Positions 11,401 through 54,080 of a stretch of 64,000 bases of DNA are shown here, in pieces. Source of the stretch: Ranitomeya imitator (taxonomy: Eukaryota); the NCBI RefSeq assembly GCF_032444005.1, contig NC_091289.1:178126001-178190000 (forward strand). The letters are read 5' to 3'. The notes beneath the pieces were generated by a model, which saw only the letters and a list, made by a program, of their open reading frames with translations, was not told the origin of the DNA and did no database searches. Position 1 is the first letter of the stretch, and every line of letters starts with the position of its first letter. The translations under genes were made by a program, and so were the position numbers.

Positions 11401-14400
11401 GAGCAACGAGTATACTTGCTCATCGCTAATGATAACAGAAGGCATCAAACTCACCCGTGTGTCCATGCGCTATTTTCAATGCTCTTCGAAAACGGAATCC
11501 ATGAGGGCTCAGGTGAAAAATTAGGTCATTGTGATAGGGAAGAAAAATGAATCGGAAGTCCACCAGAAAGGAGAGATCATACACAGCTTTGATGTAAGCA
11601 TTCTCACTGAGGATAACACGGAAAATGAGCATGAGTGCACACTGATATAATCAAATTTACTCAGGTTCACCTTGTTGTGTTTCAATGAGGGTTGAAGTCT
11701 CACTACATGATAAGTGGATAAAACTAATTAAAACCAATAATTTTCAAAGTTAAAACCCAACAGATGGCTGTCACGTTGTACGTTATATGTCGGATCCCGG
11801 GGCATTATGTGGCTCAGGAGCTGAACCTGCATCATAACCGGCAGACACTTGCTGTGTTACACAGCCATCATCTCCCTCTAAGGCCACCAAGTGGAGCTGA
11901 GTTCCATTTGCTGCTGTTAATACCTTAAATACCTTAAAGCGTGTGTTATGCCATTCCACTCACCCATCAGCCCCCTCGTGGCACAACCGCAGGGTGCTGA
12001 TGGTTTTCCAAGACAGTCAGTGGTCTGCTGAACACCACCTTTCTTACTATGAAGGTCTTCCTGTGAAGAGCAGCCTGAATCTGGTGTTCATGGAAGCATG
12101 TGGTTTTTACGATAAATACTGCACTACTGGTATTACACTATGTAGTACAAATGTCCAAACTATTGTAGGTTCAAGTCCGGTAAGAGGACCAAAAAGCAAA
12201 AAAAAAAAGAAACTGTTCTAAAAATCAAACCAAAAAATTAGAATCATCTCCTATTTCCTCCATTAAAAATATAGAAATAAAAGAATGAATATATGTGATA
12301 TTGTTGCATCTGTAAAAATCTGATCTATCAAATATAAAATTAATTAACCCAATTGGTAAAGAGAAAAAAAACGCAATAAAAAGCGATCAAAATGTTGTAT
12401 CTACAGCAAAACGGTATCAATAAAAACGCAAAATTTTTGCAGAAATTACGATTTGTTAAATATGTTAATTAGAAGACTTACCCACGTTAGTAAAGAGTTA
12501 GAGACCGATGTGCACAAGTCTCACACATTAACAATGATTTTTTTTGACACAGAATATCACAGAACTTGGCATCTCACGGAAAACGTGTAAAATAATGTCA
12601 GGTATTATTACATCCCAGGTATTCCTGGCAGGTAAAGGGGCATTTCACATTTACTACATACATTATGATGATAATGTATGCAAACTGTAAAGTGCTGCGG
12701 AATATGTTAGCACTATATAAAAATAAAGATTATTATTATTATTATTATTATTATTATTATACCAAGGATTCAAGCTTCAGGAGGCTAATTTGCATATTCC
12801 AGGTGCCTTCTGGGAGAAGCGAAGTCTCCCTAAGCTAGAAGATCGTTGGGTACAGCCGGGACCAGCTGCTTCGAAAGCATCACCAAACCAGGGATTCAAG
12901 CTTCAGGAGGCTAATTTGCATATTCCAGGTGCCTTCTGGGAGAAGCGAAGTCTCCCTAAGCTAGAAGATCGTTGGGTACAGCCGGGACCAGCTGCTTCGA
13001 AAGCATCACCAAACCAGGGATTCAAGCTTCAGGAGGCTAATTTGCATATTCCAGGTGCCTTCTGGGAGAAGCGAAGTCTCCCTAAGCTAGAAGATCGTTG
13101 GGTACAGCCGGGACCAGCTGCTTCGAAAGCATCACCAAACCAGGGATTCAAGCTTCAGGAGGCTAATTTGCATATTCCAGGTGCCTTCTGGGAGAAGCGA
13201 AGTCTCCCTAAGCTAGAAGATCGTTGGGTACAGCCGGGACCAGCTGCTTCGAAAGCATCACCAAACCAGGGATTCAAGCTTCAGGAGGCTAATTTGCATA
13301 TTCCAGGTGCCTTCTGGGAGAAGCGAAGTCTCCCTAAGCTAGAAGATCGTTGGGTACAGCCGGGACCAGCTGCTTCGAAAGCATCACCAAACCAGGGATT
13401 CAAGCTTCAGGAGGCTAATTTGCATATTCCAGGTGCCTTCTGGGAGAAGCGAAGTCTCCCTAAGCTAGAAGATCGTTGGGTACAGCCGGGACCAGCTGCT
13501 TCGAAAGCATCACCAAACCGCGCGCCGAATTTTTGCCTGTAGGACATTATTGCAAGAGAGCTTGGCTGAGTAGATTACACAAGAAGGAAAACACACAGCA
13601 AGTCAGCAGGATCTAGGAGCAACATGGCAGATGTGACAACCTACATGGTGAGCTGCAGCATGTGCTACATGTTCACAGATCGACCAGAAGAAGAATCCAA
13701 TTTCACCTGTCAGAAGTGTAGACTAGTGGCCCTTTTAGAAGAAAAGGTGCGGGGTCTGGAAGAAAGAATAGCAACTTTGAAACTCATCAAAGAGAATGAA
13801 GACTTTCTAGACAGAACAGAAGCATCTCTACTGGTCACAGAAGGTGCAAAAAGTGTCAGAGAACCTCCAAAAGCAGATGAGTGGAAGCATGTGACCAAAA
13901 GAAGCAAGAAGACCATGGAGAAATCACCAACCACACAACTGAAGAACCGATATCAAATCTTTGTAGAGGATGAAGATGGCACACCTAAGAATGAAGCAAT
14001 ACCAGCAAGCAAAAAAGAAAAGGGCACACAGCAACAAGTGACAGCAAAAAGTGCAGCCAAGAAGCAACGAAGAGTGGTGGTGGTGGGAGACTCACTACTG
14101 AGAGGCACAGAAGCAGCCATCTGCAGACCGGACATAACTGCAAGAGAAGTATGCTGCCTTCCAGGTGCGATGATCAAGGATGTGACTGATAGGATACCAA
14201 AGCTCTTCAGCTCCAAGGACGTCCACCCATTTCTTCTGATACATGTTGGCACCAATGACACGGCAAGGAAGGACCTACCGACAATCTGCAAGGACTTTGA
14301 AGAGTTGGGGAAGAAAGTAAAGGAACTGGATGCACAGGTAGTTTTTTCTTCTATCCTTCCAGTAGACGGGCATGGCACCAGGAGATGGAACAGGATCCTT

Positions 14401-17400
14401 GATGCAAACAACTGGCTAAGACGATGGTGCAGACAACAAGGATTTGGATTCCTGGACCACGGTGTGAATTACTGGTATGATGGACTCCTCGCCAGAGACG
14501 GACTACACCTCAACAAACCTGGGAAACACACATTCGCCAGAAGACTCGCTACACTCATCAGGAGGGCGTTAAACTAGAAGAAGAGGGGACGGGAAGAAAA
14601 ACATTAGACTCAAACAAAGACGACCCAGGAAAACATACTCAGAAGGGAGGTAAGAACATTTCTAAAACAATCCACAGTGAGGAGATTGGAACAAAACAAA
14701 ATCCTCTGAACTGCATGCTCGCAAACGCCAGAAGCCTGACAAACAAGATGGAAGAACTAGAAGCAGAAATATCTACAGGTAACTTTGACATAGTGGAAAT
14801 AACCGAGACATGGTTAGATGAAAGCTATGACTGGGCAGTTAACTTACAGGGTTACAGTCTGTTTAGAAAGGATCGTAAAAATCGGAGAGGAGGAGGGGTT
14901 TGTCTCTATGTAAAGTCTTGTCTAAAGTCCACTTTAAGGGAGGATATTAGCGAAGGGAATGAGGATGTCGAGTCCATATGGGTTGAAATTCATGGAGGGA
15001 AAAATGGTAACAAAATTCTCATTGGGGTCTGTTACAAACCCCCAAATATAACAGAAAGCATGGAAAGTCTACTTCTAAAGCAGATAGATGAAGCTGCAAC
15101 CCATAATGAGGTCCTGGTTATGGGGGACTTTAACTACCCGGATATTAACTGGGAAACAGAAACCTGTGAAACCCATAAAGGCAACAGGTTTCTGCTAATA
15201 ACCAAGAAAAATTATCTTTCACAATTGGTGCAGAATCCAACCAGAGGAGCAGCACTTTTAGACCTAATACTATCTAATAGACCTGACAGAATAACAAATC
15301 TGCAGGTGGTCGGGCATCTAGGAAATAGCGACCACAATATTGTGCAGTTTCACCTGTCTTTCACTAGGGGGACTTGTCAGGGAGTCACAAAAACACTGAA
15401 CTTTAGGAAGGCAAAGTTTGAACAGCTTAGAGATGCCCTTAATCTGGTAGACTGGGACAATATCCTCAGAAATGAGAATACAGATAATAAATGGGAAATG
15501 TTTAAGAACATCCTAAATAGGCAGTGTAAGCGGTTTATACCTTGTGGGAATAAAAGGACTAGAAATAGGAAAAACCCAATGTGGCTAAACAAAGAAGTAA
15601 GACAGGCAATTAACAGTAAAAAGAAAGCATTTGCACTACTAAAGCAGGATGGCACCATTGAAGCTCTAAAAAACTATAGGGAGAAAAATACTTTATCTAA
15701 AAAACTAATTAAAGCTGCCAAAAAGGAAACAGAGAAGCACATTGCTAAGGAGAGTAAAACTAATCCCAAACTGTTCTTCAACTATATCAATAGTAAAAGA
15801 ATAAAAACTGAAAATGTAGGCCCCTTAAAAAATAGTGAGGAAAGAATGGTTGTAGATGACGAGGAAAAAGCTAACATATTAAACACCTTCTTCTCCACGG
15901 TATTCACGGTGGAAAATGAAATGCTAGGTGAAATCCCAAGAAACAATGAAAACCCTATATTAAGGGTCACCAATCTAACCCAAGAAGAGGTGCGAAACCG
16001 GCTAAATAAGATTAAAATAGATAAATCTCCGGGTCCGGATGGCATACACCCACGAGTACTAAGAGAACTAAGTAATGTAATAGATAAACCATTATTTCTT
16101 ATTTTTAGTGACTCTATAGCGACAGGGTCTGTTCCGCAGGATTGGCGCATAGCAAATGTGGTGCCAATATTCAAAAAGGGCTCTAAAAGTGAACCTGGAA
16201 ATTATAGGCCAGTAAGTCTAACCTCTATTGTTGGTAAAATATTTGAAGGGTTTCTGAGGGATGTTATTCTGGATTATCTCAATGAGAATAACTGTTTAAC
16301 TCCATATCAGCATGGGTTTATGAGAAATCGCTCCTGTCAAACCAATCTAATCAGTTTTTATGAAGAGGTAAGCTATAGGCTGGACCACGGTGAGTCATTG
16401 GACGTGGTATATCTCGATTTTTCCAAAGCGTTTGATACCGTGCCGCACAAGAGGTTGGTACACAAAATGAGAATGCTTGGTCTGGGGGAAAATGTGTGTA
16501 AATGGGTTAGTAACTGGCTTAGTGATAGAAAGCAGAGGGTGGTTATAAATGGTATAGTCTCTAACTGGGTCGCTGTGACCAGTGGGGTACCGCAGGGGTC
16601 AGTATTGGGACCTGTTCTCTTCAACATATTCATTAATGATCTGGTAGAAGGTTTACACAGTAAAATATCGATATTTGCAGATGATACAAAACTATGTAAA
16701 GCAGTTAATACAAGAGAAGATAGTATTCTGCTACAGATGGATCTGGATAAGTTGGAAACTTGGGCTGAAAGGTGGCAGATGAGGTTTAACAATGATAAAT
16801 GTAAGGTTATACACATGGGAAGAGGGAATCAATATCACCATTACACACTGAACGGGAAACCACTGGGTAAATCTGACAGGGAGAAGGACTTGGGGATCCT
16901 AGTTAATGATAAACTTACCTGGAGCAGCCAGTGCCAGGCAGCAGCTGCCAAGGCAAACAGGATCATGGGGTGCATTAAAAGAGGTCTGGATACACATGAT
17001 GAGAGCATTATACTGCCTCTGTACAAATCCCTAGTTAGACCGCACATGGAGTACTGTGTCCAGTTTTGGGCACCGGTGCTCAGGAAGGATATAATGGAAC
17101 TAGAGAGAGTACAAAGGAGGGCAACAAAATTAATAAAGGGGATGGGAGAACTACAATACCCAGATAGATTAGCGAAATTAGGATTATTTAGTCTAGAAAA
17201 AAGACGACTGAGGGGCGATCTAATAACCATGTATAAGTATATAAGGGGACAATACAAATATCTCGCTGAGGATCTGTTTATACCAAGGAAGGTGATGGGC
17301 ACAAGGGGGCATTCTTTGCGTCTGGAGGAGAGAAGGTTTTTCCACCAACATAGAAGAGGATTCTTTACTGTTAGGGCAGTGAGAATCTGGAATTGCTTGC

Positions 17401-53905: not shown

Positions 53906-54080
53906 CTTAGGGAGAGACCCAAGTTGGGCTAAATGTAGCGGGACGAAAGAGACCGAAAAGCCCTCTACTTAAAGGAAATACATAGTGGATGCTTTCCTGA
54001 AACGGAAAGTACTTGCAAGCAGCATAATACAAAGAATAGGTTTACCCAGAATCCTTTGCAGTAGGCGGAGCTATGCAAAT
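53906..54080 (-). promoter_or_regulatory. snRNA-type DSE and PSE-like elements within the retrozyme-like unit
   Basis: Octamer 54073-54080; GC-box-like AGGCGGAG 54063-54070; SPH-like TACCCAGAATCCTTTGCA 54043-54060; CTCTCCCTAAG on the minus strand at 53916-53906. Confidence 0.6.

What the first reader, a model, noticed from the sequence alone, without database searches (positions are those of the whole stretch)
12788..54080. Two unrelated retroelements share the same promoter layout
Seen: read in transcript direction, the CR1 monomer and the hammerhead unit both show ATTTGCAT, then a reverse-oriented SPH-like site, then an identical 10-mer TCTCCCTAAG, with octamer-to-PSE gaps of 154 and 156 nt. 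The surrounding sequences show no obvious similarity. Inference: independent or shared capture of the host SNAPc/snRNA promoter by retroelements in this lineage, perhaps for oocyte expression. It is also possible, but untested, that the CR1 mobilises the ribozyme element. It raises the question of how a 4.8-kb mRNA escapes Integrator 3'-box termination.
Basis: inference. Interest (0 to 1): 0.75.

Follow-up and report, generated by a model that had tools for sequence, protein, structure and literature searches.

The report
Frog LINE and ribozyme repeat share snRNA-type promoter
A young jumping gene (CR1 LINE) and an unrelated self-cutting RNA repeat in this poison-frog genome carry the same set of small-nuclear-RNA-gene promoter signals in the same order; this is already known for the repeat, would be unusual for a protein-coding jumping gene, and is still untested there.

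Summary

- **Gaps.** They are 155 and 157 nt, not 154 and 156. The CR1 figure exists only by crossing into the next 126-bp monomer; inside one monomer the gap is 29 nt. The hammerhead family has two forms, 157 and 160.
- **Motifs.** Against published human consensus sequences, both elements have an octamer, then a reversed Staf/ZNF143 site (15/18 and 17/18), then a PSE-like site (10/12 and 9/12). None of the 7 other octamers in the window has either.
- **Collinearity.** Four exact blocks, including a new 9-mer, line up in order: 5 of 5000 shuffles reach this, and it is the best of 1222 real tiles.
- **Hammerhead PSE.** It is homologous to the axolotl retrozyme's TCACCCTAAG. Newt satellite 2 is known to use an snRNA-type promoter, so this side is old, not a lineage-specific capture.
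- **CR1.** The shared 10-mer lies 62 nt before this insertion's first base and before the array/linker junction. The same 62 nt separates it from the ribozyme's first base. SNAPc use by the CR1 is plausible but unproven.
- **Mobilisation.** CR1 mobilising the ribozyme repeat is not supported.
- **Earlier notes.** The scan already noted both parts on other DNA of this genome; the link between them is what is new here.

The parts
12761..17599 (+). Intact CR1-like LINE, 4,839 bp, inserted in an (ATT)n tract with a candidate target duplication ATTATTA; its 3' tail is ACTATGTT x2 with no poly(A)
   Evidence: ORF1 13624-14577 has a GDSL esterase domain and ORF2 14715-17495 has APE and RT domains; the ends were read directly
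12761..13519 (+). Six 126-bp monomers, 99-100% identical, ending in ACC followed by a unique linker to ORF1
   Evidence: TRF 6.0 copies; blastn of one monomer
12788..12795 (+). Octamer ATTTGCAT, repeated every 126 nt up to 13418-13425
12799..12817 (-). Staf/ZNF143 (SPH)-like site, reversed, 3 nt after the octamer, 15/18 to the published consensus; one per monomer
12825..12842 (+). PSE-like site beginning TCTCCCTAAG, 10/12 to the published human PSE consensus; one per monomer, the last at 13455
12873..12881 (+). GAAAGCATC, a third exact block shared with the hammerhead unit at the same distance from the octamer (+85 against +84); one per monomer
53887..54267 (-). One family unit of the hammerhead retrozyme (381 nt here; 384 in the form with AGC behind 54037)
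   Evidence: Depth falls about 100-fold outside it, and a tandem joint 54267 to 53887 is present in run X8
54268..54294 (-). 27-nt start of a second unit: the copy is 1.07 units long
   Evidence: direct repeat with 53887-53913
54295..54324 (-). 30-nt inverted duplicate of 53908-53937, private to this copy (a fold-back junction); it breaks the PSE upstream of the ribozyme to TATCCCTAAG
   Evidence: depth about 2,300 against about 500,000
54162..54234 (-). Type I hammerhead ribozyme with a short helix III; predicted cut between 54185 and 54184
   Evidence: Rfam HH9 30.1 bits, E 7.6e-5, below the gathering score of 52; core CUGAUGAG / GAAAC / GUC read
54073..54080 (-). Octamer ATTTGCAT of the hammerhead unit
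   Evidence: no variant at 5% or more in the family
54042..54060 (+). Staf/ZNF143 (SPH)-like site, reversed relative to the transcript, 12 nt after the octamer, 17/18
53988..53996 (-). GAAAGCATC block of the hammerhead unit
53898..53915 (-). PSE of the hammerhead unit beginning TCTCCCTAAG, 9/12 to the human consensus; homologous to the axolotl retrozyme's TCACCCTAAG

Best explanation
Both elements carry promoter modules of the vertebrate snRNA-gene type. Each has an enhancer made of an Oct-1 octamer with an adjacent reversed Staf/ZNF143 site, and a SNAPc-type proximal element (PSE) whose core here is TCTCCCTAAG.

Such a promoter lies wholly upstream of its start site, so a retroelement can inherit it only if the unit is repeated in tandem. 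Unit n then starts transcription at the first base of unit n+1, and the RNA still carries complete promoters.

In the retrozyme this is the old amphibian satellite-2 arrangement. The PSE sits 62 nt before the first base of the ribozyme domain and 112 nt before the cut.

In the CR1, each 126-bp monomer is a compact copy of the same logic. The PSE sits 62 nt before the monomer boundary, which is also the first base of this insertion and the junction to the unique leader. The enhancer of one monomer lies a canonical 155 nt before the PSE of the next.

Shown: the motifs, their order and spacing, the statistics, and the homology to the axolotl PSE. Inferred: factor binding, the start sites, Pol II use by the CR1, and that the likeness reflects use of the same host factors rather than descent of one element from the other.
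For: - Motif scores against published consensus sequences (PMC5493778): Staf 15/18 (CR1) and 17/18 (hammerhead), both reversed and 3 or 12 nt after the octamer. PSE 10/12 and 9/12.
- Background outside the two elements is 1.2e-4 per position for Staf and 2.4e-3 for PSE. None of the 7 other octamers in the window has either.
- The chicken 7SK promoter is described with an SPH site 4 bp downstream of the octamer, its coordinates written -192 to -210, a PSE at -67 to -46 and an octamer at -222 (PMC2235858). That layout is close to both elements here.
- The collinear chain of four exact blocks is reached in 5 of 5000 shuffles and is the best of 1222 real tiles.
- The axolotl retrozyme Ax353 has GGGTCTCACCCTAAG where the frog has GGGTCTCTCCCTAAG. 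The axolotl 20-mer has one hit in the window, with 0 expected. The PSE-to-cut distance is 107 nt in axolotl and 112 nt in frog.
- Newt satellite 2 is reported to have an snRNA promoter responsible for Pol II transcription (PMC2220036 citing Coats et al. 1994).
- The 10-mer, octamer and Staf core show no variant at 5% or more across a very high-copy family, and they are present in two other organisms' runs.
- 62-nt phasing in the CR1: a virtual preceding 10-mer at 12699 leads to the insertion's first base at 12761, and the last 10-mer at 13455 leads to 13517, the A of the ACC that ends the array.
- 62-nt phasing in the hammerhead unit: 54296 leads to 54234, the first base of the Rfam hit. Both start positions read ACCA.
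- There is no TATA-like sequence between the PSE and the predicted start in the CR1, and a T5 run at about 13530 would stop Pol III. That fits a Pol II snRNA type.
- There is no 3'-box consensus in the CR1 sense strand.
Against: - No start site, factor binding or expression was measured.
- The six monomers are identical and the hammerhead family is nearly uniform, so conservation within the families does not single out the motifs.
- The CR1's 155-nt spacing follows from the monomer period and was picked after the fact.
- Enhancer-to-PSE spacing is not conserved among retrozyme families: about 22 nt in axolotl Ax353.
- Octamer and ZNF143 sites are also common in ordinary mRNA promoters.
- Pol II started at snRNA promoters is reported not to enter productive elongation (PMC3337830), which sits badly with a 4.8-kb mRNA.
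- Another copy in this genome is noted as having 19.5 monomers (s1-307384), so not every insertion starts at the predicted phase.
- The PSE consensus used is human. The frog's own snRNA genes could not be examined.
Confidence: 0.5

Rival explanations
1. Only the enhancer part is real in the CR1. The monomer is an ordinary Pol II promoter or enhancer using POU (octamer) and ZNF143 sites, as many mRNA promoters do. Its 10-mer identity with the retrozyme PSE, the 155-nt spacing and the 62-nt phasing are coincidences. The retrozyme alone has a true snRNA-type promoter.
For: - ZNF143 is said to bind over 2000 promoters of both mRNA and snRNA genes (PMC7154149).
- Ordinary local alignment of the two elements is not significant.
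- A 10/12 PSE match occurs 27 times elsewhere in the window.
- snRNA promoters are reported as poor at long-range elongation.
- The CR1 spacing crosses a monomer boundary.
Against: - The joint chain of blocks is rare.
- The 10-mer is identical to a PSE with independent phylogenetic support.
- Two separate CR1 landmarks, the insertion start and the array/linker junction, fall 62 nt after the 10-mer. That is the same distance as in the retrozyme, and it falls in the range given by chicken 7SK, whose PSE runs from -67 to -46.
Confidence: 0.33
2. The likeness comes from descent. The CR1 monomer was built from a piece of the retrozyme (or of its Penelope-like parent), or the reverse, by template switching or recombination, and then diverged outside the factor sites.
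For: - Both share the same frog-type variant TCTCCCTAAG, where axolotl has TCACCCTAAG.
- There is a third collinear exact 9-mer with no known promoter role.
- The PSE-to-start distance is the same, and both predicted starts read ACCA.
- Both families are very abundant in the same genome.
Against: - The sequence between the blocks shows no similarity.
- The Staf sites differ in sequence and in distance from the octamer, 3 against 12 nt.
- Axolotl Ax330 also has TCTCCC, so that variant is not private to this frog.
- The collinearity needs the CR1 monomer to be read across its own boundary, which simple descent from a 170-nt stretch does not predict.
Confidence: 0.12
3. The whole resemblance is chance, found by reading 64 kb for familiar motifs.
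For: - The comparison was chosen after the fact.
- A shared 10-mer between a 126-nt and a 466-nt sequence alone is not rare (42 of 300 shuffles).
- A pattern scan of metagenome contigs found the octamer, TTCTGGG and the 10-mer in order in a bacterial coding region.
Against: - The chain is reached in 5 of 5000 shuffles and is the top of 1222 real tiles.
- The Staf-like sites are among the few best in the window and sit right after the octamers.
- The retrozyme PSE is conserved to axolotl.
Confidence: 0.04
4. The CR1 is the autonomous partner that mobilises the hammerhead repeat, and the shared promoter co-expresses the two.
For: Only the shared promoter layout and their co-residence in one genome.
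Against: - The CR1 3' 160 nt and the unit share nothing (87 of 300 shuffles).
- The unit ends in ...GCATGTATGTAT, not in the CR1 ACTATGTT tail.
- This copy has a fold-back junction, and earlier scan notes report the same kind of junction in other copies; it is not a feature of CR1 insertions.
- A preprint finds vertebrate retrozymes related to the pLTR of Penelope-like elements and co-distributed with them.
Confidence: 0.03

Closest known systems
Newt satellite 2 and amphibian non-LTR retrozymes (Epstein and Gall; Coats, Zhang and Epstein 1994; Cervera and de la Pena 2020, PMC7229834)
   Same: A tandem unit of about 330-385 nt with a type I hammerhead that has a short helix III. The PSE block is homologous to that of axolotl Ax353 and lies at a similar distance from the cut. 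An snRNA-type Pol II promoter is reported for the newt repeat.
   Different: The frog enhancer (octamer plus reversed Staf site) lies 157-160 nt before the PSE, against about 22 nt in Ax353. The frog PSE has T where axolotl has A at position 3. Promoter activity has not been tested in frogs.
Mouse L1 monomeric 5' UTR (A, Tf and Gf monomers)
   Same: A LINE whose 5' end is a tandem array of promoter-like units, followed by a short unique linker and ORF1. Array length varies among copies: the scan notes 6 to 88 units in this genome.
   Different: This is a different LINE clade (CR1-like, with an esterase ORF1 and no poly(A)). The unit is 126 bp. The motif content is that of an snRNA-gene promoter, not the YY1-type sites recalled for L1 (own knowledge).
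Vertebrate Pol II snRNA gene promoters (U1, U2, U4, U5) and the type 3 Pol III promoters (U6, 7SK)
   Same: An octamer plus Staf enhancer, a PSE about 55-65 nt before the start, and about 150 nt between enhancer and PSE, with an SPH site just downstream of the octamer as in chicken 7SK.
   Different: The product would be a 4.8-kb coding RNA or a ribozyme RNA, not an snRNA. No 3' box was found. The units are tandem, so each monomer also has a PSE only 29 nt after its own octamer.
Pr77 promoter of trypanosomatid non-LTR retrotransposons (PMC8190864)
   Same: It is a LINE promoter reported to bind a SNAPc subunit (SNAP50) and TBP (title and abstract).
   Different: It is a 77-nt internal element in protists, with no octamer, Staf or PSE layout and no tandem monomers. 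I did not read the paper beyond its title and abstract.

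Membership tests
snRNA-gene-type (SNAPc-dependent) promoter | Enhancer (DSE) with an Oct-1 octamer ATTTGCAT | tested here: met
   An exact octamer is in every CR1 monomer and in the hammerhead unit
snRNA-gene-type (SNAPc-dependent) promoter | Staf/ZNF143 (SPH) site next to the octamer | tested here: met
   15/18 (CR1, 3 nt after the octamer) and 17/18 (hammerhead, 12 nt after), both reversed; background 1.2e-4 per position
snRNA-gene-type (SNAPc-dependent) promoter | PSE matching TCACCNTNASNNNAAWRN about 55-65 nt before the start site | tested here: inconclusive
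   CR1 scores 10/12 and hammerhead 9/12 against the human consensus. The hammerhead site is homologous to axolotl TCACCCTAAG. The distance to the presumed starts is 62 nt, but no start site was measured and the frog's own PSEs are unknown
snRNA-gene-type (SNAPc-dependent) promoter | Enhancer about 150-200 nt upstream of the PSE | tested here: inconclusive
   155 nt in the CR1, but only across a monomer boundary (29 nt within one); 157 or 160 nt in the hammerhead family
snRNA-gene-type (SNAPc-dependent) promoter | 3' box (GTTYN0-3AARRYAGA) shortly after the RNA's end | tested here: not met
   There is no exact match in the CR1 sense strand or in a dimer of the hammerhead unit. The CR1 has only two 11/12 near-matches, 2.3 and 3.2 kb from its 5' end
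snRNA-gene-type (SNAPc-dependent) promoter | SNAPc binding and PSE-dependent initiation | not testable with these tools
   Needs ChIP, reporter assays or start-site mapping; only contigs were available
Non-LTR retrozyme / amphibian satellite 2 | Type I hammerhead with an intact catalytic core | tested here: met
   Rfam HH9 full-length match, 30.1 bits, E 7.6e-5, below the gathering score; the core letters are present
Non-LTR retrozyme / amphibian satellite 2 | Non-coding unit of about 170-400 nt occurring in tandem at high copy number | tested here: met
   A head-to-tail joint 54267 to 53887 is in a contig of run X8; summed word depth is about 5e5 in a DNA run; the unit is 381 or 384 nt
Non-LTR retrozyme / amphibian satellite 2 | Sequence homology to described amphibian retrozymes outside the ribozyme | tested here: met
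   The axolotl Ax353 20-mer around its PSE has one hit in the window, in the unit, with 0 expected. Only short blocks were compared; no full alignment was made
Non-LTR retrozyme / amphibian satellite 2 | Expression as linear and circular RNA | not testable with these tools
   Contigs of a run guessed to be RNA (X19) cover the unit, but the library type is not on record
CR1-clade LINE | ORF2 with an APE endonuclease and a reverse transcriptase | tested here: met
   Pfam Exo_endo_phos 1.9e-14 and RVT_1 4.1e-34
CR1-clade LINE | ORF1 with an esterase (SGNH/GDSL) domain; 3' end with a short microsatellite and no poly(A) | tested here: met
   Lipase_GDSL_2 3.3e-09; tail ACTATGTT x2. That these traits mark CR1-like elements is my own knowledge
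CR1-clade LINE | RT groups with CR1 in a phylogeny | not tested
LINE and non-autonomous partner pair (CR1 mobilising the retrozyme) | The partner shares the LINE's 3' end or tail | tested here: not met
   Best local score 19, reached by 87 of 300 shuffles; the tails differ

The most novel reading that the evidence does not exclude
A vertebrate protein-coding LINE (CR1) is transcribed from tandem snRNA-gene-type, SNAPc-dependent promoter units that use the same PSE core and the same 62-nt PSE-to-start distance as the co-resident hammerhead retrozyme. On this reading, two unrelated retroelements in one genome have both solved the problem that an upstream promoter is not copied into the RNA in the same way, by tandem repetition. 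A SNAPc promoter would then be producing a long translatable RNA that avoids Integrator cleavage.
Probability: 0.35. Interest if true: 0.75.

Novelty: new variant of a known kind. Interest (0 to 1): 0.52.

Why it matters
snRNA-type promoters are thought to be specialised for short, non-polyadenylated RNAs and to be coupled to Integrator. A LINE that uses one for a 4.8-kb coding RNA would be a natural test case for what sets the elongation and 3'-end fate of Pol II at such promoters.

It would also extend the mouse-L1 idea of monomer promoters to another LINE clade and another promoter class. It shows how tandem repetition lets a retroelement inherit a promoter that lies wholly upstream of its start site.

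For retrozymes, it adds evidence from a frog that the PSE is a conserved, functional part of the unit across amphibians.

Tried and rejected
- **Ordinary local alignment** of the monomer array against the hammerhead unit returned only the 10-mer and was not significant.
- **Rfam at gathering thresholds** found nothing in the window, so there are no snRNA genes here with which to compare promoters.
- **Sequencing runs.** All 24 listed runs are kept as contigs, so no start site, strand or expression level could be read. Reads were laid on the hammerhead unit.
- **The family is too uniform** for a conservation footprint within the species.
- **Papers not held.** Coats et al. 1994 (PMC308520), Schaub et al. 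1997 and Myslinski et al. 1992 were not available. The newt promoter is therefore cited second-hand, and Xenopus PSE sequences could not be obtained. My recollection that Xenopus PSEs begin TCTCC is unverified and is not used as evidence.
- **Metagenome pattern scan** for octamer, TTCTGGG and the 10-mer in order gave one bacterial coding-region hit, taken as chance.
- **CR1 as mobiliser of the retrozyme:** rejected.
- **The extra block CACCAAA** after the hammerhead PSE lies in flanking DNA outside the family unit and is taken as chance.

Full report
**What is there.** Scan notes identify the window as poison-frog DNA.

On the + strand, 12761-17599 is an intact CR1-like LINE.
- Six 126-bp monomers, 99-100% identical, occupy 12761-13519, followed by a roughly 100-nt unique linker.
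- ORF1 (13624-14577) has a GDSL esterase domain. ORF2 (14715-17495) has APE and RT domains.
- The 3' tail is ACTATGTT x2. The element sits in an (ATT)n tract with a candidate ATTATTA target duplication.

On the - strand, 54324-53887 is a solo copy of a hammerhead retrozyme.
- It comprises one family unit (54267-53887), 27 nt of a second unit (54294-54268), and a 30-nt inverted duplicate private to this copy (54324-54295).
- The ribozyme (54234-54162) matches Rfam HH9 over its full length at 30 bits, below the gathering score, with an intact core.

The six assembly gaps (19067-35777) lie between the two elements. Neither element contains an N. Only their distance, order and relative orientation rest on the scaffold, and nothing below depends on that.

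**Checking the observation.** The motifs are real.
- By my count the gaps are 155 and 157 nt.
- The CR1 figure is obtained only by going from the octamer of one monomer to the 10-mer of the next. Within a monomer the two are 29 nt apart.
- Laying contigs of four runs on the hammerhead copy shows a very high-copy family. Its unit is 381 nt, or 384 nt with an AGC insert between octamer and 10-mer. The insert holds about 23% of the depth in the same organism's DNA run, and it is in the single contig there in X8 and X20 and in the contig holding most of X19's depth. The family gap is therefore 157 or 160 nt.
- No variant at 5% or more touches the octamer, the Staf core or the 10-mer. The whole unit is almost invariant, though, so this says only that these are family features, not private ones.

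**Is it more than chance?** Ordinary local alignment finds only the 10-mer, and that alone is not significant. The layout is.
- In transcript sense the two elements share four exact blocks in order: ATTTGCATA at 0 and 0, TTCTGGG at +20 and +29, GAAAGCATC at +85 and +84, and TCTCCCTAAG at +163 and +165.
- That chain is reached by 5 of 5000 dinucleotide shuffles. The hammerhead locus is the best non-self match among 1222 real 466-nt tiles of the window on both strands.
- I also scored with published consensus sequences (PMC5493778). The TTCTGGG block is the core of a reversed Staf/ZNF143 site: 15/18 in the CR1, 3 nt after the octamer, and 17/18 in the hammerhead unit, 12 nt after.
- The 10-mer begins an 18-mer that matches the human PSE consensus at 10/12 (CR1) and 9/12 (hammerhead).
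- From background rates outside the two elements, the chance that an octamer has both a Staf site and a PSE in these positions is about 3e-4. None of the 7 other octamers in the window has either.
- The chicken 7SK promoter is described with the same arrangement: octamer at -222, an SPH site 4 bp downstream written as -192 to -210, and a PSE at -67 to -46 (PMC2235858).

**The hammerhead side is an old, known arrangement.**
- The supplement of Cervera and de la Pena 2020 gives axolotl retrozyme sequences. Ax353 reads GGGTCTCACCCTAAG where the frog reads GGGTCTCTCCCTAAG.
- The axolotl 20-mer has a single hit in the window, in the unit, with none expected.
- The axolotl version matches the 5' half of the PSE consensus perfectly. 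The distance from the PSE to the ribozyme cut is 107 nt in axolotl and 112 nt in frog.
- A second axolotl family, Ax330, has TCTCCCTCTG at the same place, so TCTCCC is an accepted amphibian variant.
- Newt satellite 2, the founding member of these repeats, is cited as having an snRNA promoter responsible for Pol II transcription (PMC2220036 citing Coats et al. 1994). The original paper was not held.
- The retrozyme's promoter is therefore a new member of a known kind, not a capture in this lineage.
- The enhancer position is not conserved. In Ax353 a Staf-like site and TTTTGCAT lie only about 22 nt before the PSE.

**The CR1 side.** No paper I could search describes an snRNA-type promoter on a vertebrate LINE. 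The nearest is the trypanosomatid Pr77 promoter, reported to bind SNAP50.

Three observations beyond the motifs favour a working PSE:
1. The first base of this insertion (12761, reading ACCA) lies 62 nt after where the preceding monomer's 10-mer would start.
2. The last 10-mer (13455) lies 62 nt before the A of the ACC that ends the array and joins the unique leader.
3. In the retrozyme the same 62 nt separates the PSE-equivalent position (54296) from the first base of the ribozyme domain (54234, also ACCA).

There is no TATA-like sequence between the PSE and the boundary, and a T5 run sits just inside the leader. If it is an snRNA-type promoter, it is therefore of the Pol II kind.

This fits a simple logic. 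A promoter that lies wholly upstream of its start is lost on retrotransposition unless it is repeated in tandem. Unit n then fires at the first base of unit n+1.

**Against it.**
- Nothing was measured. All runs are contigs and other copies could not be fetched.
- The 155-nt spacing follows from the monomer period.
- Octamer and ZNF143 sites are common in ordinary promoters.
- Pol II from snRNA promoters is reported not to enter productive elongation (PMC3337830).
- I put the SNAPc reading of the CR1 at about 0.35-0.4, and the ordinary-promoter reading close behind.

- Mobilisation of the retrozyme by the CR1 is not supported. The 3' ends share nothing, the tails differ, and this copy has a fold-back junction, as earlier scan notes report for other copies. 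A 2026 preprint links vertebrate retrozymes to Penelope-like elements.
- On Integrator, the CR1 sense strand has no 3'-box consensus, only two 11/12 near-matches more than 2 kb in. The signal coupled to snRNA promoters is therefore absent.
- Oocyte expression is untested.

**A point about this locus.** In this solo copy the complete module (54080 to 53898) lies after the ribozyme and points into flanking DNA. The PSE ahead of the ribozyme is broken by the private inversion and reads TATCCCTAAG. This copy is thus not a self-sufficient unit; only tandem arrays are.

**Relation to earlier scan notes.**
- The scan had already noted CR1 copies with 16, 19.5, 41 and 88 monomers, and the snRNA-type signature in the hammerhead unit, on other DNA of this genome.
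- I checked the hammerhead notes here: the 384-nt unit, the promoter aimed at the ribozyme, and the sharing with salamanders.
- I could not check the other CR1 copies.
- New here:
  - the quantified link between the two elements;
  - the third shared block;
  - the common 62-nt phasing;
  - the axolotl PSE homology;
  - the negative test of the mobilisation idea.

Noticed in passing
window 1620-1685: The best Staf/ZNF143-like site in the window outside the hammerhead unit (17/18, - strand, starting at 1679) lies about 30 nt from a CCAAT-type ATTGG box. It may be an ordinary host gene promoter. It also gave a weak blast match to the hammerhead unit's Staf region.
   Followed up: no
window 54295-54324 against 53908-53937: A 30-nt exact inverted duplicate sits at the upstream end of the hammerhead copy. 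Family depth drops about 100-fold there, so it is private to this copy. It looks like a fold-back or template-switch junction, as earlier notes described for other copies.
   Followed up: partly
window 54037: The hammerhead family has two length forms, with and without an AGC insert (381 and 384 nt). The shorter form dominates the DNA run of the same organism. The longer form is the one seen in the contigs of the other organisms' runs (X8, X20) and in most of the depth of a run guessed to be RNA (X19).
   Followed up: partly
window 53887 and 53978: Ten and nine contigs of the DNA run break away into unlike sequence (agreement 0.45-0.49) at exactly these positions. Many family copies therefore seem to end at the same unit positions. 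53887 is the downstream end of this copy in transcript sense.
   Followed up: no
window 53871-53880: In the flanking DNA, a TATA-like CATATACA lies 35 nt after the start of the hammerhead unit's PSE, roughly the PSE-to-TATA distance of U6-type Pol III promoters. It is probably chance, but this solo copy could in principle drive a short flanking transcript.
   Followed up: no
window 12790-13542: The monomer array reads as a 250-aa open frame only because 126 nt is 42 codons without a stop. It is not evidence of a gene.
   Followed up: no
window 41076-42044, 20853-21243, 3121-3811, 52941-53455: Other tandem arrays are present: 427 bp x2.3 at 98% identity, 49 bp x8 at 96%, 66 bp x11, and 27 bp x19 just beside the hammerhead copy. 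The 66-bp array shares CAGCTGCTTC with the CR1 monomer, taken as chance.
   Followed up: no
L001 7447-7513: The only metagenome contig with octamer, TTCTGGG and the 10-mer in order is a bacterial coding region. This is a chance match and a reminder that the three short motifs alone are weak evidence.
   Followed up: yes
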